Source: Octopus bimaculoides | Lineage: Eukaryota | Assembly (NCBI RefSeq): GCF_001194135.2 | Contig: NC_069003.1 | Coordinates: 370,061-434,060, forward strand | Length of the DNA stretch: 64,000 bases | Direction of reading: 5' to 3' | In this document: positions 14,920 to 62,744 of the stretch, piece after piece | How positions within the stretch are numbered: the first letter of the stretch is position 1 | Layout: each line of letters starts with the position of its first letter | Made by a program: the position numbers and the translations under genes | The notes under the pieces: model-generated | What the model saw: only the letters and a program-made list of their open reading frames with translations | Told to the model about the DNA's origin: nothing | Databases searched by the model: none

Positions 14920-15830
14920 AGCAGTTTTCCCTACCAGAAGTAGAGAAGAAATTTCAGGTGTGGAAGCAAGGTTTAGAATCGAAGGGCCTTAGAGCCAATG
15001 TTGCAAAGACCACAATTCTAGTAAGTAGGAAGGCAAACACATCACACACCCCTTCAGGTAGGTGGCCCTGCTTGATCTGTAGAAAAGGTGTGGGTAGAAA
15101 CTCCATAGGATGTACTCAGTGTAAGCTATGGGCACATAAGAGGTGCAACAACATCAAAGGAAGATTAACTCGGACGATAGCTTTCATGTGTGACAGATAC
15201 ACTGCGGCAATAAACACCACAGATGCTCAGAAAACCGATTCCATCACATGCCAGGGGAAGAAACTAGAAGTAGTTGATAGCTTCCGCGACCTAGGTGACC
15301 AAGTCTGTAGTGGGGGGGGGGATGCTCAGAGAATGTTACCGCTAGAATAAGAATAGCCTGGGCAAAGTTCAGAAAGCTCCTACCCCCACTGGTAACAAAG
15401 GCCTCTCTCTCAGAGTGAAAGGTAGATTGTTTGATGCATGTGTGCGAACTGCCATACTTCACAGTAGTGAAATATGAGCTGTAACTACTGAAGACATGCG
15501 TAGGCTTGAAAGAAATGAAGCTAGCATGATCCGCTGGATGTATAATGTCAATGTGCACACATGACAGAGTGTGAGCGCCCCAAGAGAAATGTTGGACATA
15601 AGAAGCATCAGATGTGACGTGCATTGGTATGGTCATGTACTACGGATGGATGAGGAAAGCAGTGTGAAGAGGTGCCACTCCCAAACAGTGGAAGGAATCC
15701 GGGGTAGGAGGAGACCCAGGAAGATATGGGATGAGGTGGTGAAGCATGACCTTTGAACGTTGGGCCTCACAGAGGCAATGACAAAAGACCAAGACCTCTG
15801 GAGATATGCTGTGACTGAGAAGACCCAACA
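14881..15830 (+). mobile_element. 5'-truncated RTE-clade LINE ORF2 (RT from YADD, PHD-like insertion, C-terminal domain), pseudogenised
   Basis: PWELLYADDL..WKQGLESKGLRANVAKT..CLIC..CTQCKLWAHKRC..DSFRDLGDQV..ARIRIAWAKFR..HWYGHVLRMDEE..GRRRPRKIWDEVVKHDL..DLWRYAVTEK; several frameshifts and stops. Confidence 0.95.
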
Positions 15831-15882: not shown

Positions 15883-16384
15883 GTGAGGGAGAGAGAGGTG
15901 AGTGTGTGTGTTTGTGGGGGGGGGGGGCAAAGTATGTCAATGAAAGTCATAGTAAAATGTAAAAACAGCAGAATGTAAAGTAACGAGCGATGTTCAGCAT
16001 TGGAAAATATTAATACAAATAATCCAAACAGAGAAACACAAAGAATTCACAATGAGAAAGAAGAGAGATCTAATGTTTTATGGTAGAATCCTTCATCGGA
16101 GATGAAATGCTAAATGGCTTTGCAGGATGAACATATTATGAGTAAATGCGGGTGGGAGGAAGAAGCATGGTAACTTTAATAAGAATAATAATAATAATAA
16201 TGAAGGAGAAAGGGGAGGTAACAGAGAGTAACCTGTGTTAGGAAGGGGTGACAACTATCAGAGCCAGGAGAAATAAGTAAAGCCTGCAGATTTGGAAAAA
16301 GTTGACAAGTGGCAGAGACCCGTTTTGTTAGCGATCATTTACATAGCAATCAGACGGAGCTGGACTACAATTAATATGTATATA

Positions 16385-16730
16385 TTCTTTTATTCTTTTA
16401 CGTGTTTCAGTCATCTGACTGCGGCCATGCTGGAGCACTGCCTTTAGTCGAGCAAATCGACATCAGGACTTATTCTATTGGTCTTTTTTGCCGAACCGCT
16501 AAGTTACGGGGACGCAAACACGCCAGCACCGGTTCTCAAGCAATGTTGGGGGGGAGAAACACACACACATACAATGGGCTTCTTTCAGTTTCCGTCTACC
16601 AAATCCACTCACAAGGCTTTAGTCGGCCTCAGGCTATAGTAGAAGACACTTGCCCAACGTGCCACACAGTGGGACTGAACCCAGAATCATGTGGTTGGTA
16701 AGCAAGCTACTTACCACACAGCCACTCCTG
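16385..16730 (-). mobile_element. Full-length CORE-type (octopus OR-like) tRNA SINE
   Basis: Minus strand: head gtggctgtgtggtaag..ctgggttcagtccc (A/B boxes), CORE-like gcacgttgggcaagtgtcttc, CA tract, 3' gactgaaacacgtaaaagaataaaagaata tail. Confidence 0.85.
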
Positions 16731-24859: not shown

Positions 24860-25009
24860 TATACATTTCAGTCATTTGACTGTGGCCATGTGGGAGCACC
24901 GCCTTAACAGGTTTTTTAGTTTAAGAAATTGACCCCTGGCCCTATTCTTTGTAAGCCTGGTACTTATTCTATCAGTCTCTTTTACTATCAAGCAATGGTG
25001 GGAGGACAA

Positions 25010-25070
<61 letters not shown>

Positions 25071-25242
25071 TGCATATGTAAGATGGGCTTCTTTCAGTTT
25101 CCGCCTACAAAATTCACTCACAAGGTTTGGTCTGCCAGACGCTATAGTAGGAGACAAATGCTCAAGGAGCCATACAGTGAGACTGAACCCAGAACCATGT
25201 GGTCGGGAAGCAAGGTTCTTACCACACAGCTACGCTTGTGCC
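24860..25242 (-). mobile_element. Near full-length CORE-type (OR-like) SINE
   Basis: Colinear with 16385-16730, with an expanded (CA)n centre. Confidence 0.85.
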
Positions 25243-25261
25243 TATAAATGTGTGTGTCTGG

Positions 25262-25312
<51 letters not shown>

Positions 25313-25692
25313 AATAAGGATAAGATCGATATTTAAAATATTGATCTTATCAAGTGGTCAGCATGGGAATAAAAACCATCAAAGGTAATAATTATTTAAA
25401 ATTATAATACAGGGTATCAAGAGATACCACCATGCTGAAAAAATAGCAGTCAAATCCTGACTCTAAAACCACNNNNNNNNNNNNNNNNNNNNNNNNNNNN
25501 NNNNNNNNNNNNNNNNNNNNNNNNNNNNNNNNNNNNNNNNNNNNNNNNNNNNNNNNNNNNNNNNNNNNNNNNNNNNNNNNNNNNNNNNNNNNNNNNNNNN
25601 NNNNNNNNNNNNNNNNNNNNNNNNNNNNNNNNNNNNNNNNNNNNNNNNNNNNNNNNNNNNNNNNNNNNNNNNNNNNNNNNNNNNGTGTCTGG

Positions 25693-26454: not shown

Positions 26455-26890
26455 TACATCATCATTGTTTAATATCCTTCTTCCAAGCTGCCATGGTGTG
26501 GACAGTTTGACAGGAGCTGGCCAGGCAGGAGCCAGCACAATGCTTCTGTGTCTGTTTTGGCAGGGTCTTGGCAGCTGGATGCCCTTCCTAACACCAACTG
26601 CTCTGCAGAGTGGGTTGAGTGCTTTTTACAAGGCACTCACACAGTTGAGGTCGTGATATTTACCACTGGATGCCCTTCCAAATACTTTACAGTGTGGACT
26701 GGGTGTTTTTTAAAGTGGTACCTGCACTGGCAGGGTCACCGAGTACCTTTGCATGACAAGGAATCTCTGAAGGGGGAGGGGGCATTGAAGGGGATGATCT
26801 TGTATCAGATGATGAAGGGTTAGGGTTAGGGTTAGGGTGTGACAGAAAGAAACAGATGTCTTGCTGTTGAAGAGGTACATGGTTGCCAGT
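26455..26890 (-). mobile_element. RTE-related 3' element with duplicated ggaagggcatccag module
   Basis: Colinear with 61790-62285; ends in gatgatg tail; contains (TTAGGG)3 at 26820-26837. Confidence 0.7.
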
Positions 26891-31221: not shown

Positions 31222-32963
31222 AGATGCAGTTGAAGTAGGTACTTAAATGGAGGCACCTTATTAGGTTGGTATAATCCAAAAACACCCAAACAATATTAAT
31301 TGAACATTGAATATCAAGACTCCATGCAGTGGTGTTTGTACCTGATATTCCTGCCGTGTGTGTAGACAATGCAACCCAACTAAGTGAAGAGTTAATATAA
31401 AAGAGTGTTCACTGATTTAAACAATGGTCTTGCTGGGGGTATTGAGTTTTTATTGTTTGCTTGTCGTCCACCGTAAAATATAGTCCAACAGCTTGGAGTA
31501 TATTTGAATGGAAGTACGTGCTGCAAGACTTGCTTAGCAAAGAGTAATCATTCTAAAATATTGTACACAATCGAAATTCTTTCTTGAATTCAAAATGCAA
31601 AATATTTGGATGCTGCCCTTGTGAATGGAAATTTGAGAGGGTGGCAACATGGTTCTCCCTATTTTCAGATGCAGGAATGATAGACATGTACATGTACAAT
31701 CACACACACACACAGCTGTCATGCTGCAGTCCTGGTTGACACAAAGGTGGGGAAAATCTTTCTCTCTTGGAAAATGTTAGAACTTTATACTTCGTTTCAC
31801 TCAGGCTCTTTTCCCCAAGACTCAGCCAACCAGAACTATGCCTACCTCCACAGCACCAAAGAGGCAATGTGTTTCCAGCCAAAATGCCTGCAGAGTCATC
31901 AATATTTCCAAGTGCAATAGTTGGCATGAAATTGTTGATAACAGACCAGTTATATACCATAACCAGTAATATACAGAATGATACTACACACACACACACA
32001 CACACACACACAGGAGCATGTATACGAGTGTGTGTGTGGGATTTTGAATATGTATGCTTATCTTTTTATGTGTGTGTCTTTAGTTATATTTAAATTGTTT
32101 AGGGTCCTCGTATTTCTTGTTTCCATAATCCTTGCTTGAAGAATTTTCCTGTGTTTGAGTGTGTGTACATACATACAAATAAAGACATGCATACACACAC
32201 ACACATACATGTGTGTGTGTGTGTGTATTACAACAACAAAAATGAACGACTCAAAGTCTTTCAATCCTCTAAAGAACAAGTTGGTCATAGGTACAAGTCC
32301 AGAAATTCTTTGCTGTCAGCAAAACAAATTGATACTACATGATGCATAACAATAGTGGAAATAATGCCATGACTCATGTATCTCAGAATTAATGTGTCCA
32401 CTTCTATTTTTCTTTACTTCCTGCAAATTATCCAACTTTCAGAAATATATAATCCAGCTGGATATATCTTGAAAACGCTGAATATGCATAGATAACTGTA
32501 TTTCCCTTCAGCGTGCAGATGGATGATCCCTACGAAATAGTTGTGAGGCTGCTTTGGCTTCGCATTTTTCACCCACTTTCTAAAACAGTATTGAAGGTGT
32601 AGCGACAGATGGAAGAAAACATATCCATACAACACCATAAAGCACAGGTTGGGGTACACATTAGCTTTGTATATCTTGTGTGGGTAGCACTGGCAAGTTG
32701 GTCAGGCATCTCTTGGGGATGATATCATTTTCCTCCATAAGTTATGTATTTCAACTGATAAATACACATCCAACAGCAATAAAATTAATGTGAGCATATA
32801 AGGAATGGGAACACACACACACACGCGTTCGTGTGTTGGCACTTATCAAAGTGGCAAGTGCCAACAAACATTAACTCTTGGTCAACTTCTGTCAATATTC
32901 ATGAAAAATGTATATATCTACTCATGTTCTGAGTTCTATTTTCCTGTTTGCATCTCCCAGCTG

Positions 32964-33008
<45 letters not shown>

Positions 33009-33625
33009 TGTATCTTGTTTCATAAGAAGGACTTTTGACAATTTCTATTATTAATACCAGCAGCCTACCCTGAGTTTTCCCTCATATCACATGCTTGATG
33101 ACAGGTCCAACACAAATTATCAGGAGTTATAATCTTTTATCATCTCATCTATATAACATAAGTAAAAAAACATAAAATGGCTTTATGGCAAGGGACACAA
33201 GGACTTTTGACATTCTATATCCAATAATTTATCTGGTTATCATATACACATTGTAGCTATCATGTAACCAGTTATCTGCATACAACTATTATCTCTCTGC
33301 AGTGAACATTGTTCAAAGCCATCTTTAGCTGCTCATAGACCTGATTCTTTATCAAAGAAGTGGGCATCCACACCATTAAAATATGATGATACTATACCAT
33401 TTATGAGCCACTTGGATCTTTATGCTACAACACCCATAACACATACCTTAAGAAAGCACTACCTCTGTGTCACTATATCTATAAAACAATGTTACTCTAT
33501 AAAACAACAATAATATATTTATAGGACAAAAAAAAACCCCAAAAGACAATTGAACTATCCAATCAAACTTTTAAAAAATCAAACAAAATATTCACCAGAA
33601 CAAAACCTTTAAAATTCAATCCTAC

Positions 33626-33698
33626 CTGTCTCCTGTTGAAATATTGCAAAATTCATTCTGAAACTTACCTGCAAGGAAAATAGAAAATATATGTTAAT
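33626..33698 (-). other. Candidate recursive splice site RS-B with 43-nt cryptic exon
   Basis: Minus strand ttaacatatattttctattttccttgcag|GTAAGTTT (junction 33669|33668); second donor ACAG|GTAGGA after 33626. Confidence 0.7.
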
Positions 33699-33854
33699 TA
33701 ATAAATTCACTTTTACACATGATTAGCATTTTGTTACATTTAACAATAAAGACATATTTTTTTTCTCATATCTTTTTTATCAACAAATATGATTCACTGA
33801 GAAATATACCTGTTTTGAATTATGAAGGTGTATTCAACTTTAGCACAGACTCAC

Positions 33855-33891
<37 letters not shown>

Positions 33892-34044
33892 AAGAAAGAA
33901 AAAAACCATACAAATATGTACTGTTGAATCATAGTTTTATTTATATATGGAGTATGGATACATAAATAATTTTATGTATGTATAATTATTTGTATACTGA
34001 TAGATATGAATAATTAGAACTGCCTGTGTGTGTGTGTGTGTGTG

Positions 34045-36299: not shown

Positions 36300-37620
36300 C
36301 TCTATGTCTCCATTCACTTTACCATTTCTCAAATTCTGCTCAATTGTATCAGAATGCACCAGTGAACATTTTTTAAACATTTGATGTTTAGGGGGTTATT
36401 CTTTTTAAAGGTTGATATAATGCAATCATCTAACTTTTGCATGCTCTTTTATATTCTGAACCTAAATGTCTTTGTCTTTAGAACTTCAGAAATTCCACCA
36501 CAAATGCACAATTTTATCAATCAACTGCTTTTTTTCATTTTTCAAGAACTCATAGGTCATCTCCATTTTCAATTTCTTTATTTTCCTGATGAAGTATTTT
36601 ATTTTTGCTTTCATTGCTTGATATAATTCTTTGACCCTGATATTTTTTCCCCTTTCATATTGTCATCTGTAATTATTTCTTTCTCATTGCATGTTGTAGG
36701 TGTAGCACTACAGGTTGGTGCCATTAGGTGATAAAGTATTTTCTCATCTATTTGTGATATTTTCCTTGCAATCTCCAGTGTTTTTTTACTGGTGGTGCTT
36801 TGGAAACTGAGGTTTGTTTTTCTTGCTGTTCCTTGTCATTATTTTTGCTTCATTTTTATTCATTTCTTCAGGGCATTAACATTTAGCATTAACTTATGTT
36901 TTGCTCCAACAAATATAACTTGGCTTTCTATTTAGTATCCTCAATCTCATACCCTTTACTTTGATGCCATTTACCAGGCATAGTTCAGATATGCCTTTGC
37001 AGTCCTTGGAGATCAGTAGAACTTGCTAATCCATTATGATGTTCCCTGACCATAAATCCCTTTTGTTCAGCCTTCCATACTGCAACACAAGATTCCCTGT
37101 TAGTTGTCTTCTTATCATGACAATTGTGTTTCTTTCATTTGTGTACTGGAGGATGAATGTATAGTCAGAGGTGTGTCTGACAACTTCACATTGTTTTCTG
37201 GCTGCAGTTTCAGCTTTAAAGGTACTGCAAAAAGTGCCATACCTTTAGTTTTTTCCAATTATGCTAATCTCTCTGAATATATCCTGGAGGGCTTGAACTA
37301 TGGTGAGGAGTAATTTAAACCATTTCCATTATTCCATCAGCAGAGATGTATAATTTTTTTTGCTTCACCATCTCCTGTGGCAAAATAATACTAATGGGTT
37401 TTGCAAAATTCTTCCATCAATGTTTCTTATCTTGTAACTGTGACAAGGTCAAAAATTCTGTCTGTTCACTTGGTGTTGAGGGAAAATTTATTTTCACCCT
37501 GTTGCTGTTTGAACAGGTTTTAGTATTTGGAATTTTTTAAGGGTCGTTTGTATTATTGTCACTGCCCAGCCATCCCAATTACTTATTTGAATATCTAAGA
37601 TATTTTGTTTTGTGATGTCA
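36300..37620 (-). mobile_element. Very old non-LTR retrotransposon remnant, R4/Dong-like RT
   Basis: Minus-strand patches FQND, NWK, EQKGF, KDCK, LNYAW resemble the R4/Dong RT order EQKG..KDCK..NL.MAW; many stops; clade assignment tentative. Confidence 0.35.
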
Positions 37621-42605: not shown

Positions 42606-43066
42606 NNNNNNNNNNNNNNNNNNNNNNNNNNNNNNNNNNNNNNNNNNNNNNNNNNNNNNNNNNNNNNNNNNNNNNNNNNNNNNNNNNNNNNNNNNNNNNN
42701 NNNNNNNNNNNNNNNNNNNNNNNNNNNNNNNNNNNNNNNNNNNNNNNNNNNNNNNNNNNNNNNNNNNNNNNNNNNNNNNNNNNNNNNNNNNNNNNNNNNN
42801 NNNNNNNNNNNNNNNNNNNNNNNNNNNNNNNNNNNNNNNNNNNNNNNNNNNNNNNNNNNNNNNNNNNNNNNNNNNNNNNNNNNNNNNNNNNNNNNNNNNN
42901 NNNNNNNNNNNNNNNNNNNAATTATTTGTTGGAGAAGTGATGAATGATGTAGAATTGGAAGATATCATTTGACTGAATGTAGGATGCACGCACGTGTGTG
43001 TGCATGTGTGCGTGTGTTTGCATGTATACATACATACATACATACATATATATATACATGTATATA

Positions 43067-47644: not shown

Positions 47645-48465
47645 TTGGGATAACAACTTTAAATGTAGGCACAATGAAAAGTAGGTCTAATGAGATTGAG
47701 ATTGCAGAGATGCTGGAGCAGAGACAGGATGGAAGGGATCTGCAACAAAACTCCTCGCGAGTAGGAGACAGCAGTTCAAACTCTTCAGAGTCAGTGGTAA
47801 TGGTAATGGAGAGGTTGGGTAGATTATAAGAAAATGTAAACTTCATGTACAGTAGGTGCACTGGAACCATTCCTATGCACACACTGGAAATTGAGTCTCT
47901 TAAATGCCCAGAGAGCACACTAGCAGTAGTTGATAGCTTTTATTACCTAGGAGATGTAATTTAGCAAGGGAGGTGGTTGTCCTGGAAGTATTGTAGCCGT
48001 GAGAACTGGTTGGAGAAAGTTCAAGGGGCTACTACCACTGCTAACAACAAAGATCTTTTGTCTAAGGGTGAAGGGCAGATTCTATGGCATTTATATTAGA
48101 ACTGCTATGCTGCATGGTAATAAGACATGGGCCTTGAATGCAGAGGATATGAGGAGACTGGAAAAAAGGAAGTGAGCATGCCTTGTTGGGAGTGCAATGT
48201 TTGCATGAAAGAATTGTAACAAAAATGCTGAGTGAAAAACTGGGCATTGGAATCAGTTATTGCGTGCAAGAGAGAAGACTGCGTGGGTATATATACACAT
48301 GATGAATATGGATAAAGACAGTTGTATGAAGAAGCACTGATTGTTAAGTATGGCCAGAACTTGCAGAAGAGGGTGACCCCAAGAAGACATGGGAGGATGT
48401 GGTTAAGGCTGACCTCAGGACCCTGAGCTTGATAGGAGATGACAAAAACTGGGATCTCTGACAAT
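47645..48465 (+). mobile_element. Internally deleted RTE LINE (APE N-terminus joined to post-RT C-terminus)
   Basis: ITTLNVGTMKSRSNEI..EMLEQR and FKLFRVSGNGNGEVG (APE), then from about 47820 NFMYSRCTG..VVDSFYYLGDVI..RTGWRKF..KTWEDVVKADLR. Confidence 0.8.
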
Positions 48466-51236: not shown

Positions 51237-51565
51237 CATCATCATCATCGTTTAGCGTCCGCTTTCCATGCTAGCATGGCTTGGACGATTTGACTGAGGA
51301 CTGGTGAAACCAGATGGCTACACCAGGCTCCAATCTGATTTGGCAGAGTTTCTACAGCTGGATGCCTTTCCTTATGCCAACCACTCCGAGAGTGTAGTGG
51401 GTGCTTTTACGTGCCACCGGCACGAGGCCAGTCAGGCGGTACTCGCAACGGCCACGCTCAAAATGGTGTATCTTACGTGCCACCTACACAGGAGCCAGTC
51501 CAGCGGCACTGGCAACGATCTCGCTCAAATGTCTTTACACATGCCAGGCTTGCCCCAAAAGGTCT
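51237..51565 (-). mobile_element. Young 5'-truncated RTE 3' end
   Basis: Colinear with 5142-5877, CpG-rich, complete cgtccgctttccatgctagcatgg / catcatc tail. Confidence 0.85.
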
Positions 51566-51594
51566 TTGCAAGCCAAGTTTCGTGTCCAACGAAG

Positions 51595-51743
51595 GAGACA
51601 ATGGCCATGCTGGAGCACCGTCTTTAATCAAACAAATCGACCCCAAGACTTATTCTTTTTAAGGCTAGTACTTATTCTATCGCCCTCTTTTTGCCAAACC
51701 ACTAAGTTATGGGGACATAAATACACCAGCATCGGTTATCAAG
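51595..51743 (-). mobile_element. 3' part of CORE-type SINE
   Basis: ggccatgctggagcaccgtctttaatcaaacaaatcgacccc..ctaagttatggggacataaatacaccagcatcgg. Confidence 0.8.
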
Positions 51744-52230
51744 TAAGAGTCCCTTGTAGCGTGGGGAATTTATGTTTTGTAATGCCCTTAATATAATGTG
51801 TGTGTGTGTGTGTGTGCGTGTGTGGTGCAAAAAATATAGATAAGATGAAGACAAGCTAAAAAACAACAGCATATTAGATATACCCTCAGGAATTAGGAAA
51901 AATTAGAAGGAAGTGTCTCTCACACTTTGAACATATGCTTTTCTTATGAAAGAATAGACAAGGAAAAGTAAATGGTGAAACAGAAGAACACATGTGCGTC
52001 TATAAAACTGCTACAATATACTGAAGTGACTGGAAGTGATAAAGAGATCGCAAGAGAATTTTCCAACTCCAGTCAGAAGCAGAACAGTTGTAGTGTAGCC
52101 CCCATATCTTTCTATTTCTTTTAACTTTTTATAATCAGAAAAATCTGTGAAACCAGTTAAGCCTTTAAAAATAAACCATCTAAAAGATTCCCAGTGCATT
52201 TTCAACATATTTTTTCTACCCACACTCTCT

Positions 52231-52302
<72 letters not shown>

Positions 52303-52375
52303 TACATTGCTAGACCAAGTGATAAAAATTATAGAAAGGATCATAGCTCAATTAATTATAAAGTGAGTAAGCAGT

Positions 52376-53215
52376 GATGAGATGCAGTTTGGTTTTATGC
52401 CAAGAAGAATCCCTACCAATGCTATCTTACTGGTGAGGCAACTGCAAGAGAAGCACTTGGCCAAATATAAACCTCTTCAGATAGCTTTAGTTGACATGGA
52501 GAAAGCCTTTGACAAGGATTCCCCTTATCAGGTGAGCAATATGGAAGCTAAGGATAGATGGGTAATTGATGAAACCTGTAAAAACCATGTACGGGGACAC
52601 CATCAATCAGGTGAAAGTTGCTAATGAGTATAGCAAGCAATATAGTGTACAAGTAGGAATCCACCAGGTATGGAAGCAAAGATCAAAATTCTAAAAAGTA
52701 GGAAAACAGAGAAATCGCAGACCCCTTCAGGAAGATGGCCCTGCTCAGAATGTAGAAAAGATGTTGGTAGAAACTCCATACAGTATACCAAGTGTGAAGG
52801 CTATGGACACATTAAAGGTGTAGTGGTATCACTGGAAGATTAACAGAGAAAGTAGTCTTTACACGTGGCAGATGTGCAGGTATGTTAAACACCAGAATTG
52901 TACAGAAACTAGACCCCTCAAATGTCTTGTGGGGTCCTTAGAAGTAGAAGACAGTTTCTGCTACTTAGGTGACCAAATTAGCAGTGGTGGAGGTTGTTCC
53001 AAAAGCACAGTTTTTAGAATAAGAACAGGCTAGGCAAAAATCAGAGAGTTATTACCTCTGTTAGTAACAATGGGTCTTTCTCTCATAGTGACAGCCAGAT
53101 AGAAGCCATGCCAAAAGAGACATGGAGCTCAGGCAGATGTTCAGCTGACCAGCTCCTGTCAATGCATCCAACTCATGCTCACATGGAAAACAGATGTTAA
53201 ATGATGATGATGATG

Positions 53216-53216
<1 letters not shown>
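52376..53216 (+). mobile_element. RTE LINE RT fragment with internal deletions and 3' tail
   Basis: DEMQFGFMPRR..LVRQLQEKHLAK..VDMEKAFD..VGIHQ, jump over YADD to WK..CSECRKDVGRNSI..DSFCYLGDQISSGGG; tail gttaaatgatgatg at 53197-53216. Confidence 0.85.
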
Positions 53217-53272
<56 letters not shown>

Positions 53273-54216
53273 GTGCATGTGTGTGTATTTTTTGCCTCAA
53301 TAACATTGCTGTTGAAATAATCATACACATGAGAAAATTTCTGCTTTTCCAGAATAAACTCGATTGAAAGCTGGCTTTTTTTAAATATGTAAAATGAAAC
53401 AGCAAGAAATTTGTTATTTGTAATTAAAACACTTTTTTCCCACTAATCATAAATATTTCAAATTCTTTAATAGAGATAAATTAAATTCAGCTGTAGAAAA
53501 AAAAATGCCTTCTATAGAAAAAAAAGTCCTCTATAGGAAAGAAAAATCTTCAGGGGATCCATTTGTAAACACACAAAAGACCAAGTGTAATTGCAGCACT
53601 AGTTTGTGACAAAGCAAAACTTAAAGATGAATAGAGAATACATCTTTATGAAATAGAATTAACATAAAATTCTAATATTAAGTGAACATCAATTATTACC
53701 TTATAGGGAAACGAATGTGAAGGTGAGATAACTGAATGAATGAAATGTTCAAGTTAATTGCCTTTGTTTATCTTGTAGTGGGGAATAAGTACTTGACCAC
53801 ATGATGGAAACAACAGCAGCCCTTGAGAAATATATTCCATTTATTAGGCCACATTCATTAATATATATATGATATAGTCCATTGGTAAACCAGATAAGAG
53901 ATATTTTCCATTAATACACATTTGAAGATGAAACATTCAGTAGGTTTTCCAATGACTGATTGAGGGGTAGGGTTACATTTATTCCTCAAAATATTTGATT
54001 TCATCTTTGCTCTATTGCATCATTGCACACTAGGTTTTTGGTTTCTGTTGTAATATTTCTGGCAATAATATCCATTAATTCTCTTTCAAGTCTTTCCTTC
54101 AATGAATGTTAAATTCAATTCCTTTTTTTTTCCGTAGTAACATAAGGCATTGTCTGAAAGAGGTGTTAACTGCTTCAAAGGAACAGAAAAGTACATTGAA
54201 AATATAACAAATTTAC

Positions 54217-54297
54217 CTACATACTGTTTTAAATGACAGGAATATTTTCTTGTTGAGAAACTTACCTGCAAATAAAAGAAGAAGAAAAAGAACGTAA
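54217..54297 (-). other. Candidate recursive splice site RS-A with 41-nt (or 49-nt) cryptic exon
   Basis: Minus strand cttacgttctttttcttcttcttttatttgcag|GTAAGTTT (junction 54266|54265); downstream donors ACA|GTATGT after 54225 and TAG|GTAAAT after 54217. Confidence 0.7.
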
Positions 54298-54729
54298 GTA
54301 TTATTTGATATCAATGTTTTTAGATAATCAAAAAAATGATAATTTGAAAAACAGAAAAAATTTACAGTATGCATACATTCTGGAGCCAATCTCAACATCT
54401 GTAGCATTCAAGGATAGGCTCTGCTCCAGTGCGGACAAATACCATCAAAATGATCGATATACATAACCACACACACACACACACACACACACACATTAAT
54501 ATATGTGTACCAAAAACAGGTGATAATGATTGTGATGTTGCTGGTGCTGTTGTGTGTGTCTGTAATTATTAACATTATTTATTTTTTATTTTTTATATTT
54601 ATTCTAGTTCAGCCTAATTAAATCTAAAATAATCTAATATAAAAATTTAATTTGATTTTTTAGATTAAAAAAAACATATTAACATGTGTGTCAAAATGTG
54701 AAGTAGATAGAGAGAGAGAAAGGGAATGC

Positions 54730-54765
<36 letters not shown>

Positions 54766-55559
54766 ATGAAAGAATTGTACAGGACAAGTGTGAGGGACAG
54801 AAACAGCAAAAAGAGAAATGCAGAGAGAGAGAGGGGGGAGCGGAAAAAAAGAGATAAAGGTGGAGGTTGAGAAAGCAAGAAACATGTTGGGATGAGAGAA
54901 AGATGGAAAATGATGAAGAAGGAAAGAGAGAGAGAACCAGAGATGAGTTGAATTGTAATAATTATTTTTTTCCCTGTTGGTAACAATTATTGGTTGAAAA
55001 ACTTAAAAACTTCAAATACAAATGAAATAAAACTAGAATTACAATTTTACTTTTTCAGCCTACAAAGAATTTCTGCAATTTTACCTGCATATTAACTTAA
55101 TACGACAACTGCATCGTAATGTTGTTATATTCTGTATTATGCACAGGTAATATGGTGGCAGTGGTTGTTGGTGCATTTTCTTTAGAAATCTTCCAATGAT
55201 AAATGTAATTAATCGTTTGAAAAAAAAAGTTGAAATTCAATTTTTTCCTCATTGTTTGATGAAAAATGATAATAATGATATACATATATACACACACACA
55301 CACATACATTTTTTAATCAGCTGCAAAATTACAAAAAGACTCAATACCTGAGAATTTTGTGCATAGTGCTAATCAATCGATCACACACACACATACACAC
55401 AAAAGAGACCTGCTGTCCAGTCAACATCACTCGGACCAAGAACAGGAACACATCAACCAAATTTCTAATTATTTCAAAGGCATTTTAAATGACACTTCAA
55501 GTATATGTGTTTATGTATTTGCTATATGATATTTATGTACTCGTATATGTGTGAGTGTT

Positions 55560-55672
<113 letters not shown>

Positions 55673-55674
55673 CT

Positions 55675-56010
55675 TGTTGAGTGACTTGCCAGGACCAATG
55701 CAACTCTTCCACACCAGATGTGCTGACCTTTCCATAGCAGTCTTCATAGCCTCAACCTTGTTTTCTATCAAGTTGATCAATAATGCCTTGCTTGCTTTGG
55801 CAATATCTGTGTGTCCACATGTGGGTTTCCAGAGAAGGAGATCACTGAATATTTCTCCTATGCTTCTCCAGCAGAGTCCTGCATAATGTGTCCTTTCTCT
55901 GATTACTGAGGAGATGCCATACTGTTGCTATTCTGTAGAGTATTGCCACCAAGAGAGATTGAAAACTGCACATAACATTCTTGTAAGTATGGACTGGTAT
56001 GCCTAAACAC
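55675..56010 (-). mobile_element. C-terminus of a second RTE-group LINE family
   Basis: TRMLCAVFNLSWWQ..SSVIRER..GEIFSDLLLWKPTCG..TAMERS (cf. TRMLRAxLNISW..IRERRLRFAGHCWR..SDVLLWxP). Confidence 0.7.
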
Positions 56011-56344
56011 TCATTTCCAAAAGAGGAAGAGAAAACAATGGACCTTCACTTATTCAAATGGCATGAAGGCAAAGCCTGATTACATATTGGAGGGAAAACC
56101 ATATAGCTCATTTGAAGGTTTTCTATAGATCACAAAATATCAACAGCAAAAATATATTTGAACATCTCAACAAAAAAGAAAACATTGCCATTATTTCATA
56201 TGGTTTGATTTTGTGCATGCACATTGTTTGTTTTTGATTTTGTAGACTACACAGTATAGTAGGGTCAGTTGGGCACTGTCTGGGAGAAAAACAGCACCAT
56301 GACGCAATTCACTCTGCCAGAAATTTGTAAATTACATGTTGTAC

Positions 56345-56737
56345 TGCTTGGCATTTGTGCCAGAAGCTCCAGTATGATCAATCCATAATTTCAGGTTTAG
56401 TCCCTCTGTATGGGTAACTGGGCCATGTGTCTTCTGTTACAGTTCCATGCTGTCCAATGCCTTGGGAGTAAATTTAGCAGACAGAAATATTGCAAAAATC
56501 TGGGCACTCATGTGTGTGTGTGTGCGTGTGTGTGTGTTTTGAACCTGTGTTTGTCTCCCACCATTTGACAACTGGTGTTAGTTTGTTACGTCCTTGTAAT
56601 TTAGTGGCATGGCAAAAGAGACCAAGTGAATAAGTATCTGATTTAAACGATAGTACTGGGGTTCAAAGTTTTTGCGCTAAAACCCTTCTAGCAGTACTCC
56701 AGCATGGTTTCAGTTCAGTGACTGAAATGAGTAAAAA

Positions 56738-56740
<3 letters not shown>
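56345..56740 (+). mobile_element. Old full-length CORE-type SINE
   Basis: caggtttagtccc (B box), gggccatgtgtcttc (CORE), CA/GT tract, ccagcatgg..gtgactgaaatgagtaaaa end. Confidence 0.7.
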
Positions 56741-56778
<38 letters not shown>

Positions 56779-56781
56779 ACT

Positions 56782-56927
56782 GGCTTCTTTCAGTTCTCAT
56801 CCACTAATAAGGATTTGGTTGGCCCAAGACTGTAGAAGATGACACTTGCCCAAGGTGCCATGCAGTGGGACTGAACCTGAGCCATGTGGTTGGCAAGTAA
56901 ACTTCTTAGCCAAACAAGCATGCCTGC
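56782..56927 (-). mobile_element. 5' half of CORE-type SINE, inverted relative to its neighbour
   Basis: Minus strand ccaaccacatggctcaggttcagtcccactgcatggcaccttgggcaagtg..gagaactgaaagaagcc. Confidence 0.8.
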
Positions 56928-57350
56928 TCTATACATAATGCAAATATATATTCGCACAATATGCACATGTCCACTCACAAACACCCATGTGAATCAAAGG
57001 CCACACTAAACAATTCTCCATGCTTACATTACAATTGCAAGCACAGAAACAGGCAAATTTGTAAGCATACGTATATATATACTTACAGAAATATATATAT
57101 ACAACAACAATGTAGATATATATATATGAATAGAAACAACATGCACGTATCATCCGCTCACACACATGCACGAGCATTTACTCTCAAAACTTCAATAAGT
57201 TTCCATACACTTGTGAACTCAGTGATTCGCTATCACATAAACACATTTACACACTCACATACGCAACCTAACACACACACAAACGTAACTACACAACATA
57301 CCATAGCTGTGACTGTACCAAGTAACATTTGCCTTTAGCTCTACAAATAT

Positions 57351-61789: not shown

Positions 61790-62285
61790 GCAGGGCACCT
61801 ATTTCTGCCTCTCTATTTCTCTGTCGCACTCTAAACCTTCATCATCAGATACTGGGTCACCTTCTCCAATGTTCCTTCCGTTATAGCGAGACACCTATTT
61901 CTGCCTCTCTGTCCCCCTCCAACCTTTCATCCTCTCACACAAATTCTCCTCCTCTAATGTCCCTGCCTCTCTCATAATTCCTTGTCTTGTGAATTACTTG
62001 GTGACCCTGTAAAAAGCATCCAGTCGACACTGTAAAGTGGTTGGCATTTGGAGGGGCATCCAATCGTAAGAATCATGCCAAGACTAACATTGCCTGTGCT
62101 AGTGCCATGTAAAAAGCACTGGGTCCACTCTGCAGAGTGGTTGGTGTGAGGAAGGGCATCGAGCTGTAAAAAAACCTTCCAAAATAGACACAGTAGTGTA
62201 GGGTAGTTTTCTACCTGGCTGGTTCCTCTCAACCATCCTACCCATGCATGCATGGAATATGGATGGTAAACGATAATGATATATA
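61790..62285 (+). mobile_element. RTE-related 3' element with duplicated modules and gat tail
   Basis: Colinear with 26455-26890; two gtaaaaagca..ctgtaaagtgg/ctgcagagtgg..gggcatc modules; ends gatggtaaacgataatgat. Confidence 0.7.
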
Positions 62286-62744
62286 TATAGATATGGATAA
62301 ACACACATTTTTATAACATCTGTTAGCCTGGCCATCCTAGTAATATACACCAACACAGATATACAAACTCTTGCATACAACTATGAAGTTCTCTCATACA
62401 ATTACAAATATGCATGTGTGTGTGTGTGTGTGTGCGTGTGTGTGTGTGTGTGTGCATGCTGTAAGTGTTTGAGAGTATGTTAATCACATTTCCTCAATGC
62501 AGTGATGATGACAATAGCTTAAAAACATCAACACCATAATGATGACAATAACACAAAGCCCGTCTCATTGTAGGAGCAATAATAATAGATGATGACGGTG
62601 ATGAGAATGATGATGATGATGGCATAATAGTAAGGATGATGATGATCTTAACAGTTATAATGACAGCGATGATATCATTGGTGTAATCAATTCTAAGGGA
62701 AAGGAAAAAAATCTGAATCTGCAATGAATGAAATACACACACAC

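What the first reader, a model, noticed from the sequence alone, without database searches (positions are those of the whole stretch)
54217..54297. Ratchet point RS-A (first in transcription order) with twin downstream donors
Seen: cttAc at -30, a 26-nt almost pure pyrimidine tract, GCAG|GTAAGTTT, then two overlapping donors 41 nt (ACA|GTATGT) and 49 nt (TAG|GTAAAT) downstream. Both lengths shift frame, so inclusion would act as a poison exon if the intron is in coding sequence (inference).
Basis: partly seen in the sequence, partly recalled or inferred. Interest (0 to 1): 0.7.

Follow-up and report, generated by a model that had tools for sequence, protein, structure and literature searches.

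The report
Recursive splice site in octopus intron
Deep inside a very long intron of an octopus gene sits a combined "end-of-intron / start-of-intron" signal that RNA data show is really spliced to an upstream exon, the hallmark of stepwise (recursive) intron removal known from flies and vertebrates but, as far as I could find, not yet described in cephalopods.

Summary
On the minus strand there is CTTAC (branch A at 54295), a 22/23 pyrimidine tract, and CAG|GTAAGTTT (AG 54267-54266, GT 54265-54264). Donors follow at +41 (ACA|GTATGT) and +49 (TAG|GTAAAT).

It is not chance. AGGTAAGT occurs three times in 64 kb, all on the minus strand (54267, 33670, 7924). Each has a pyrimidine tract and a donor 41-49 nt downstream. 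The flanks are not homologous.

RNA shows the acceptor is used. cDNA contigs from three runs, and one raw read pair from another study, join a sequence absent from the window (...CCCGAGGAAGAG) to 54265. They then read on unspliced through both donors. DNA runs show only the contiguous genome. An RNA contig from a related species stops matching exactly at 54267.

Best reading: a recursive splice site with a cryptic recursive-splicing exon (RS-exon), as in Drosophila and vertebrates, here in an octopus (transposon proteins match Octopus bimaculoides).

Not shown: re-splicing from the regenerated GT, inclusion of the 41/49-nt exon, the poison-exon effect, and the host gene. The exon joined at the second site differs from the one joined here, so "successive steps in one intron" is unproven. 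This is a new member of a known kind, of moderate interest.

The parts
54294..54298 (-). Branch-point-like CTTAC (A at 54295, 29 nt upstream of the 3' splice site)
   Evidence: Sequence. It fits YTNAY. Its function as a branch point is inferred, not tested.
54268..54292 (-). Polypyrimidine tract TTCTTTTTCTTCTTCTTTTATTTGC. It lies in an AG-free zone that extends 112 nt upstream.
   Evidence: The tract is 22/23 pyrimidines at -25..-3. Organism B has a 3-nt deletion inside the tract at 54276 but keeps the tract.
54266..54267 (-). Recursive 3' splice site (AG) of the first site, RS-A
   Evidence: Junction contigs in X13, X14 and X16 join an exon absent from the window (...GACTCGGTTAATACAACACCCGAGGAAGAG) to 54265. 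Both reads of one X28 pair end at 54267 with non-matching parts. DNA contigs of X1 and X2 are contiguous across the site, with no joined form.
54258..54265 (-). Regenerated 5' splice site GTAAGTTT, the ratchet donor
   Evidence: After joining to either observed upstream exon end (GAG| or AAG|) it matches CAG|GTAAGT at 8/9. It is unchanged in organisms B and C. Its use in a second splicing step is inferred, not observed.
54217..54265 (-). Cryptic RS-exon, 41 nt (54265-54225) or 49 nt (54265-54217)
   Evidence: Its length is like the other two sites (43 and 42 nt) and like the roughly 50-nt Drosophila cryptic RS-exons (PMC8605326). No inclusion was seen.
54219..54224 (-). Downstream donor 1, ACA|GTATGT (+41), 5/9 match to the consensus
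   Evidence: Contigs and reads run through it unspliced.
54211..54216 (-). Downstream donor 2, TAG|GTAAAT (+49), 7/9 match. Probably the exon-defining donor.
   Evidence: No change in organisms B or C between 54199 and 54229.
33625..33700 (-). Second site of the same architecture, RS-B: TTAAC/TTAAT branch candidates, pyrimidine tract, CAG|GTAAGTTT (AG 33670-33669), a 43-nt cryptic exon, and donor CAG|GTAGGA (GT 33625-33624)
   Evidence: An X13 contig of 711 nt joins a different exon end (...ATACTGGATGGACTTTGAAGACTTCAAG) to 33668. It then runs on unspliced through the +43 donor.
7879..7950 (-). Third site, RS-C: pyrimidine tract 21/23, CAG|GTAAGTTT (AG 7924-7923), a 42-nt in-frame cryptic exon, and a strong donor CAG|GTAAGG (GT 7880-7879, 8/9)
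   Evidence: Only an unspliced contig was seen here (X14), so there is no RNA support for its use.
54123..54131 (-). A9 run in the transcript, 135 nt downstream of RS-A. A likely internal oligo-dT priming site that lets cDNA libraries capture the splicing intermediate.
   Evidence: The X28 junction read starts at 54131. This is an inference.
53978..53983 (-). AATAAA hexamer. The basis of the rival reading, an alternative last exon ending near 53941.
   Evidence: Contigs end at 53941, 53939 and 53944 in X13, X14 and X20. X19 and the DNA contigs run across that point.

Best explanation
This is a recursive splice site (ratchet point) with a cryptic RS-exon. It lies in a long intron (at least 64 kb within the window) of a minus-strand gene of an octopus.

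Proposed mechanism:
1. As the intron is transcribed, the strong 3' splice site (CTTAC branch point, 22/23 pyrimidine tract, CAG) is recognised together with a 5' splice site 41-49 nt downstream. This is exon definition of a cryptic RS-exon.
2. The upstream exon is spliced to the AG at 54267-54266. This step is shown by RNA.
3. That join puts the exon end (..GAG) in front of GTAAGTTT and so recreates a near-perfect 5' splice site (8/9 match to CAG|GTAAGT).
4. The recreated site out-competes the weaker downstream donors (5/9 to 7/9). In the next step the 41/49-nt piece and the following intron segment are removed together, so the piece never reaches the mRNA. This step is inferred.
5. If the downstream donor were used instead, a 41- or 49-nt frame-shifting exon would be included. 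This is inferred and was not observed.
For: - Anatomy is complete and at the stated coordinates.
- The motif occurs three times on one strand only. Each copy has a 41-49 nt cryptic exon and a donor. This is far beyond chance. It is not carried by a repeat, because flank similarity is at null level.
- First step shown: a 58-nt junction contig in X13, X14 and X16 joins a non-window exon to 54265. Its word depths are 95.6, 35.5 and 36.5, against 38.5, 15.6 and 16.3 for the unspliced upstream path.
- These runs are cDNA: a template-switch-oligo tail (TATCAACGCAGAGT) appears as a loose end.
- An independent raw read pair (X28, another study) ends at 54267 and reads through both donors down to 54131. 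Its first mate lies on +, which fits a minus-strand RNA if the library is of the usual stranded kind.
- The joined form is absent from the DNA runs X1 and X2.
- Molecules joined at the site continue unspliced past the donors (to 54131 in the read pair; to about 53940 in the adjoining downstream contig). That is what a recursive intermediate waiting for the next 20.6 kb to be transcribed should look like.
- RS-B shows the same kind of intermediate: exon + 33668 + at least 685 nt of unspliced intron.
- An organism C RNA contig matches 53984-54267 and then diverges exactly at the AG.
- The core and donors are unchanged in organisms B and C.
- The architecture matches the published definition: tandem acceptor|donor, a cryptic exon of about 50 nt that is usually out of frame, a downstream donor, and donor competition (PMC8605326; PMC6224609).
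Against: - No read or contig shows the second step, meaning the upstream exon joined directly to RS-B or to the next real exon.
- The exon joined at RS-B differs from the exon joined at RS-A. That is not what a simple single-intron ratchet predicts.
- RS-C has no RNA support.
- Contig depth is a poor quantitative measure.
- A possible antisense transcript overlaps the site and may contribute to the 'unspliced' signal.
- An AATAAA 282 nt downstream, with contig ends near 53941, allows an alternative-last-exon reading.
- The related species are only about 4-5% diverged here, so conservation of a 10-nt core is weak evidence on its own.
Confidence: 0.72

Rival explanations
1. Cryptic or alternative last exon. 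The acceptor at 54267-54266 starts a terminal exon of about 325 nt. It ends by cleavage and polyadenylation near 53941, downstream of AATAAA (53983-53978). This would give a truncated transcript, and the GTAAGT would play no role.
For: - AATAAA lies at 53983-53978, with a GU-rich stretch after 53940.
- Contigs of three runs end at 53941, 53939 and 53944.
- The junction word depth exceeds the mean depth of the downstream contig. That would fit 3'-biased libraries primed at a nearby 3' end.
Against: - No poly(A) tail was seen at 53941. In X13 the contig continues there into window sequence from 36724.
- The X19 RNA contig 53726-54027 crosses the point.
- The X28 fragment ends at the A9 run (54131), not at 53941.
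- This reading does not explain why all three sites carry an identical AG|GTAAGTTT plus a donor at +41..+49.
- Typical RS-exons lack polyadenylation signals, and cryptic last exons are a separate class (PMC7997972).
Confidence: 0.1
2. An ordinary alternative cassette or poison micro-exon of 41 or 49 nt that merely happens to begin with GTAAGT. It would be spliced in using the +41/+49 donor, and the transcripts would then be degraded by nonsense-mediated decay.
For: - The acceptor is used.
- Donors exist at +41 and +49, and both lengths shift the reading frame.
- Decay would hide the included form from RNA-seq.
Against: - No contig or read uses either donor. All read through.
- The downstream donors are weaker (5/9 to 7/9) than the regenerated one (8/9).
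- Three independent exons all starting with GTAAGTTT is not expected by chance.
Confidence: 0.1
3. Splicing noise at a chance motif. The site would be a fortuitous strong acceptor used at low level, with no role in removing the intron.
For: Long AT-rich introns contain many pseudo-sites, and only a handful of datasets were examined.
Against: - The junction path is 2.2-2.5 times deeper than the unspliced path in three runs.
- The motif is strand-specific and recurs three times with the same architecture.
- The same break point appears in an RNA contig of another species.
Confidence: 0.04

Closest known systems
Drosophila intronic ratchet points with cryptic RS-exons (Ubx, kuz, Bx; Duff 2015; Joseph 2018 and 2021, PMC8605326; Pai 2018, PMC6110457)
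   Same: - Juxtaposed (Y)nCAG|GTAAGT deep in a long intron.
- Several sites per intron region (three in 64 kb).
- A short cryptic exon of about 40-50 nt with its own downstream donor, mostly out of frame.
- The regenerated donor is stronger than the downstream donor.
- An intermediate is detectable in which the upstream exon is joined to the site and followed by unspliced intron.
   Different: - The organism is a lophotrochozoan (octopus), not an insect.
- The second step, the sawtooth profile and lariats are not demonstrated here.
- Two different upstream exons are seen at two of the sites.
- At the third site the downstream donor is as strong as the regenerated one and the exon is in frame (42 nt).
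Vertebrate recursive splicing via RS-exons (Sibley 2015 as summarised in PMC5126111; Blazquez 2018, PMC6224609)
   Same: [quoted passage not shown]
- Competition between that site and the RS-exon's donor decides skipping or inclusion.
- Inclusion is predicted to introduce a frame shift or premature stop.
- The setting is a long intron.
   Different: - Only about nine fully suppressed deep-intronic sites are recorded for vertebrates, and motif enrichment there is weak (PMC2773006). Here the density is 3 per 64 kb on the sense strand and 0 on the antisense strand, which is more fly-like.
- The role of the exon junction complex was not examined.
Computationally enriched ratchet-point motifs in large introns of non-Drosophila invertebrates: sea urchin, mosquito, bee, beetle (Shepard 2009, PMC2773006)
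   Same: Sense-strand excess of combined acceptor/donor motifs in introns longer than 50 kb in an invertebrate.
   Different: That work was motif counting only and included no mollusc. Here there is direct RNA evidence for the first splicing step.
SFPQ-repressed cryptic last exons in long neuronal introns (PMC7997972)
   Same: A cryptic acceptor deep in a long intron, with a polyadenylation hexamer a few hundred nt downstream.
   Different: No poly(A) evidence was found here. Cryptic last exons do not carry a juxtaposed GTAAGT or a donor at +40-50.

Membership tests
Recursive splice site / ratchet point with cryptic RS-exon | [quoted passage not shown] | tested here: met
   TTCTTTTTCTTCTTCTTTTATTTGCAG|GTAAGTTT at 54292-54258 on the minus strand. 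It has 22/23 pyrimidines and a 9/9 donor match in the unspliced context.
Recursive splice site / ratchet point with cryptic RS-exon | Located deep inside a long intron, on the transcribed strand | tested here: inconclusive
   No exon-like ORF was found, and neither joined exon end is in the 64-kb window. Only transposon fragments were recognised. The joined exon lies more than 9.7 kb upstream of the site. The junction orientation and the X28 mate orientation indicate minus-strand transcription. The intron ends and the host gene were not identified.
Recursive splice site / ratchet point with cryptic RS-exon | Upstream exon is spliced to the site's AG, giving the first-step intermediate (exon + GT... 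+ unspliced downstream intron) | tested here: met
   Junction contigs appear in X13, X14 and X16. One X28 read pair reads across the junction and through both donors unspliced; the adjoining downstream contigs are likewise unbroken at the donors. The joined form is absent from the DNA runs.
Recursive splice site / ratchet point with cryptic RS-exon | Short cryptic RS-exon bounded by a downstream 5' splice site (about 50 nt) | tested here: met
   Donors lie at +41, +45 and +49 here, and at +43 and +42 at the other two sites. The background chance of such a donor is 0.014 per site.
Recursive splice site / ratchet point with cryptic RS-exon | Regenerated 5' splice site is re-used, so the cryptic exon is absent from mRNA (second step) | not tested
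   This needs the junction of the upstream exon to the next site or next exon, or lariat reads with 54265 as their 5' end. Donor strengths (8/9 against 5/9 to 7/9) predict skipping.
Recursive splice site / ratchet point with cryptic RS-exon | Sawtooth intronic read density in total or nascent RNA, with depth rising at the site | not tested
   Only contig mean depths were available: 38.5 upstream against a mean of 27.1 downstream in X13. These are not informative, and the raw runs had about 0-2x depth.
Recursive splice site / ratchet point with cryptic RS-exon | Conservation of the acceptor|donor core in related species | tested here: inconclusive
   AGGTAAGTTT and both donors are unchanged in organism B (DNA) and organism C (RNA). 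Overall divergence is only about 4-5%, so about 64% of 10-mers would be unchanged anyway.
Poison (decay-triggering) cassette exon | Exon is included in some mature transcripts and introduces a premature stop in the coding frame | tested here: not met
   No contig or read uses the +41 or +49 donor. The coding frame is unknown. The data are shallow, and contigs drop rare variants, so rare inclusion is not excluded.
Cryptic / alternative last exon | Poly(A) site within the exon and polyadenylated 3' ends | tested here: inconclusive
   AATAAA is present at 53983-53978, and contig ends cluster at 53939-53944. No poly(A) tail was seen, and one RNA contig crosses the point.

The most novel reading that the evidence does not exclude
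Recursive splicing through cryptic RS-exons operates in cephalopods. That would place the RS-exon mechanism in all three bilaterian super-clades and point to an ancestral way of handling giant introns. In addition, the choice of ratchet point may here be coupled to the choice of upstream exon: one exon end is seen only at the first site and a different one only at the second. Alternative 5' exons or promoters would then follow different recursive paths through the same intron.
Probability: 0.15. Interest if true: 0.7.

Novelty: new member of a known kind. Interest (0 to 1): 0.5.

Why it matters
Recursive splicing has been demonstrated experimentally mainly in Drosophila and in a few vertebrate genes. 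Outside these there is only motif-count evidence, from insects and sea urchin (PMC2773006). No paper in the searched library mentions it together with octopus.

Cephalopod genomes are large, repeat-rich and full of very long introns in neuronal genes. A site with the full architecture and direct RNA evidence for the first splicing step has two implications:
- The RS-exon mechanism is probably used in lophotrochozoans as well.
- Sites of this kind give annotators a simple signature for finding more: sense-strand (Y)nCAG|GTAAGT plus a donor at about +40-50.

Such sites also matter in practice. They create junction reads and "exons" that gene predictors may wrongly annotate.

Tried and rejected
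- **Raw RNA runs X24, X27, X28 over 53450-55500.** The output was swamped by microsatellite reads. Real depth at the site was about 0-2x. A narrower repeat gave one informative pair only.
- **Read laying on 52000-57000 and 32400-34000.** One of the two counted against the cap.
- **Looking for the joined exon ends in the window.** I tried whole sequences with up to 2 mismatches, and every 11-mer. There were no matches, so both exons lie outside the window or in gaps. The gaps are flanked by microsatellites or SINE-like sequence, which makes a hidden exon unlikely.
- **Identifying the host gene.** A protein search with the four open translations of the two exon ends found nothing at E<=10; peptides this short cannot reach significance. 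Three exact-protein look-ups meant to extend the window beyond 64000 also found nothing.
- **Rfam scan of the window.** No hit.
- **Repeat-borne motif hypothesis.** Rejected. With the core removed, the flanks of the three sites align no better than shuffled sequence.
- **Genomic rearrangement or retrocopy as the source of the junction.** Rejected. DNA contigs are contiguous and identical across the site.
- **Plus-strand reading of the 54267 junction.** Rejected. It would need a poor GC donor (CCT|GCAAAT), whereas the minus-strand reading is a textbook acceptor.
- **Sibley 2015 (PMC4471124).** Not held in the library. I used summaries in PMC5126111 and PMC6224609 instead.

Full report
**What is there**

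The feature lies on the minus strand. Reading 5' to 3' it runs:

...aatacTTACgttctttttcttcttcttttatttgcAG|GTAAGTTTCTCAACAAGAAAATATTCCTGTCATTTAAAACA|GTATGTAG|GTAAAT...

Exact coordinates:
- CTTAC at 54298-54294. The branch-candidate A is at 54295, 29 nt before the 3' splice site.
- A pyrimidine tract with 22/23 pyrimidines at -25..-3. No AG occurs for 112 nt upstream.
- Acceptor AG at 54267-54266, immediately followed by GTAAGTTT at 54265-54258.
- Donors at +41 (ACA|GTATGT, GT 54224-54223), +45 (TAT|GTAGGT) and +49 (TAG|GTAAAT, GT 54216-54215).

**Is it more than chance?**

Yes.
- The octamer AGGTAAGT occurs exactly three times in the 64 kb, all on the minus strand, with the A of AG at 54267, 33670 and 7924. 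Every copy is preceded by a pyrimidine tract and followed by GTAAGTTT.
- In 300 first-order Markov simulations of the window, no strand ever carried two such sites.
- Each site also has a 5' splice-site-like sequence a similar distance downstream: +41/+49, +43 (CAG|GTAGGA) and +42 (CAG|GTAAGG). A random minus-strand position has a donor of that quality (at least 7/9) at +35..+55 with probability 0.014.
- Only four positions on the minus strand match CAG|GTAAGT at 8/9 or better. They are the three sites and the downstream donor of the third.
- With the core removed, the flanks of the three sites are no more alike than shuffled sequence. The motif is therefore not carried by a repeat family.
- The sites are 20.6 and 25.7 kb apart. 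The first lies 9.7 kb from the window's transcriptional upstream end.

**Where the window comes from**

- The sequence is 35% G+C, dense in microsatellites and interrupted by N gaps.
- It contains no Rfam family and no convincing coding exon.
- It holds SINE-like copies and LINE fragments.
- A LINE-derived ORF (14922-15347, +) matches proteins whose only source names are Octopus bimaculoides, at 52-79% identity.
- DNA runs of "organism A" hold 99% of the words of the region. Their contig totals of 2.1-2.4 Gb fit a genome of that size.
- I therefore treat the window as an octopus intron, most likely from O. bimaculoides. The exact species is inferred, not proven.

**RNA evidence at the first site (RS-A)**

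- Logan contigs of three runs from one study (X13 and X14 from one sample, X16 from another) contain the same 58-nt contig. It consists of 54238-54267 plus 28 nt that are not in the window.
- On the minus strand that contig reads GACTCGGTTAATACAACACCCGAGGAAG-AG|GTAAGTTTCTC.... An exon ending in ...GAG has been joined precisely at the predicted AG|GT.
- These runs are cDNA. A template-switch-oligo tail (TATCAACGCAGAGT) appears as a loose end in X14.
- The junction path has word depth 95.6, 35.5 and 36.5. The unspliced upstream path has 38.5, 15.6 and 16.3. That is a consistent ratio of 2.2-2.5, although contig depth is only a rough measure.
- Downstream of the junction the contigs continue, without any branch at the +41 or +49 donors, to about 53940.
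- A raw read pair from a different study (X28) also ends at 54267 with non-matching sequence on both reads. One read runs unspliced through both donors to 54131, the first base of an A9 run. This suggests capture by internal oligo-dT priming.
- DNA contigs of two runs are identical to the window and contiguous across the site. The joined form therefore exists only as RNA.

**Related species**

- A DNA contig of organism B aligns over 53945-54460 with 22 substitutions and 19 gap letters.
- In that contig AGGTAAGTTT and both donors are unchanged. The differences near the site are a 3-nt deletion in the pyrimidine tract and substitutions at 54257 and 54230.
- At this low divergence (about 4-5%), conservation of the core is expected about two times in three by chance. 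It is compatible with selection but not discriminating.
- More telling is an RNA contig of organism C. It matches 53984-54267, has only one difference in 54176-54267, and then stops matching exactly at the acceptor AG with five further letters. That is what a spliced junction would give.

**The other two sites**

- At 33670 an X13 contig of 711 nt joins ATACTGGATGGACTTTGAAGACTTCA-AG to GTAAGTTTCAG... It continues unspliced through the +43 donor for at least 685 nt. This is again the form expected of a recursive intermediate.
- X14 and X16 carry the unspliced form at that site.
- At 7924 only an unspliced contig was seen.

**The puzzle of two upstream exons**

The exon end joined at the second site differs from the one joined at the first. 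Neither is in the window. The gaps between the two sites are flanked by microsatellite or SINE-like sequence, which makes a hidden exon unlikely.

Three explanations remain open:
- Alternative 5' exons of one gene.
- An exon missing from this draft assembly.
- A scaffolding error.

I could not decide among them. So the claim that the three sites are consecutive ratchets of one intron remains unproven.

**Mechanism**

The anatomy and the intermediates match the published model.
- In Drosophila, a ratchet point is a tandem acceptor|donor. It is recognised together with a downstream donor as a short (about 50 nt), usually out-of-frame cryptic RS-exon.
- After the first splice, the regenerated donor normally out-competes the RS-exon donor, so the exon is removed with the next intron segment. 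Weakening the regenerated donor causes inclusion (PMC8605326).
- The same logic is described for vertebrates (PMC6224609; PMC5126111).

Donor strengths here:

| Site | Regenerated donor | Downstream donor(s) | Cryptic exon |
|---|---|---|---|
| First (54267) | 8/9 (GAG or AAG + GTAAGT) | 5/9, 6/9, 7/9 | 41 or 49 nt, frame-shifting |
| Second (33670) | 8/9 | 7/9 | 43 nt |
| Third (7924) | 8/9 | 8/9 | 42 nt, in frame, open in two phases |

Skipping is therefore predicted at the first two sites. At the third, the two donors tie and the exon keeps the frame, so some inclusion there would be tolerable.

Status of each step:
- First step: shown.
- Exon definition: inferred.
- Donor competition: inferred.
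- Second step: inferred.

**Rivals**

- *Alternative last exon.* An AATAAA lies at 53983-53978, and contig ends cluster at 53939-53944 in three runs. This allows a reading in which the acceptor starts a terminal exon of about 325 nt. Against it: no poly(A) tail was seen, one RNA contig crosses the point, and the recurring AG|GTAAGTTT-plus-donor design is left unexplained (PMC7997972).
- *Plain poison cassette exon.* This is not supported by any use of the +41 or +49 donors. Rare inclusion hidden by decay cannot be excluded with these data.
- *Splicing noise.* This is unlikely given the depth ratio, the strand-specific triplet of sites and the break point in another species.

**A side observation**

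The X13 contig end at 53941 continues into window sequence from 36724. Allowing for the 5-nt overlap (ACCTA), the junction can be placed at 36727|53944. The skipped 17.2 kb is then a canonical GT...AG intron on the plus strand (TAG|GTGATA ... ATTCAG|TAGG).

This may be an antisense spliced transcript overlapping the site, or it may be a template-switching artefact. If it is real, some of the "unspliced" signal across the site may be antisense RNA. That would affect the depth ratio but not the junction evidence.

**Comparison and novelty**

- Recursive splicing through ratchet points and RS-exons is well known in Drosophila and vertebrates.
- Motif enrichment has been reported for sea urchin and several insects (PMC2773006).
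- No paper in the searchable library combines recursive splicing with octopus. The single paper matching "cephalopod" does so only in its reference list.
- The site is therefore a new member of a known kind in a clade where it has not been documented. It is interesting to splicing and cephalopod-genome specialists, but not mechanistically new.

**Limits**

No sawtooth, lariat or second-step evidence could be collected.
- The host gene was not identified.

Noticed in passing
window 33625-33700 (-) and 7879-7950 (-): Two further sites share the same architecture: pyrimidine tract, CAG|GTAAGTTT, then a donor at +43 or +42. The one at 33670 is joined in RNA to an exon end (...GGACTTTGAAGACTTCAAG) that differs from the one joined at 54267. 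The one at 7924 has no RNA support. Its 42-nt exon is in frame, and its donor is as strong as the regenerated one.
   Followed up: partly
window 36700-36727 and 53944-54267 (+ strand reading): An X13 cDNA contig joins 53941 to 36724 with a 5-nt overlap. Placed at 36727|53944, the skipped 17,216 nt form a canonical GT-AG intron on the plus strand. This may be an antisense spliced transcript overlapping the recursive site, or an RT template-switch artefact. Contigs of X14 and X20 also end at 53939 and 53944.
   Followed up: partly
window 53978-53983 (-) and 54123-54131 (-): An AATAAA hexamer lies 282 nt downstream of the recursive site, and an A9 run lies 135 nt downstream. The A9 run coincides with the start of the only raw junction read. 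Internal oligo-dT priming probably explains why cDNA libraries capture this intermediate.
   Followed up: partly
window 14922-15347 (+); also 52367-52621 (+) and 47960-48172 (+): Fragments of non-LTR retrotransposon ORFs (reverse transcriptase and a PHD-type zinc finger). The first matches proteins named from Octopus bimaculoides at 52-79% identity, which identifies the genome as an octopus.
   Followed up: partly
window about 5593-5958, 16375-16698, 24955-25314, 26473-26820, 51298-51659, 61975-62310: Multiple copies, in both orientations, of a short interspersed repeat. They are recognisable from recurring translated strings such as ...SGTGNDLA... and ...HTVGLNPE(S/P)CG.... They are probably SINEs, and one copy abuts the assembly gap at 42606.
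   Followed up: no
window 54468-54496, 54731-54762, 55278-55308, 55572-55671 and many others: Very dense (GT)n, (GA)n and (TA)n microsatellites. They attract thousands of unrelated RNA reads and produce spurious 'joints' in read laying. Coverage near them should be ignored.
   Followed up: yes
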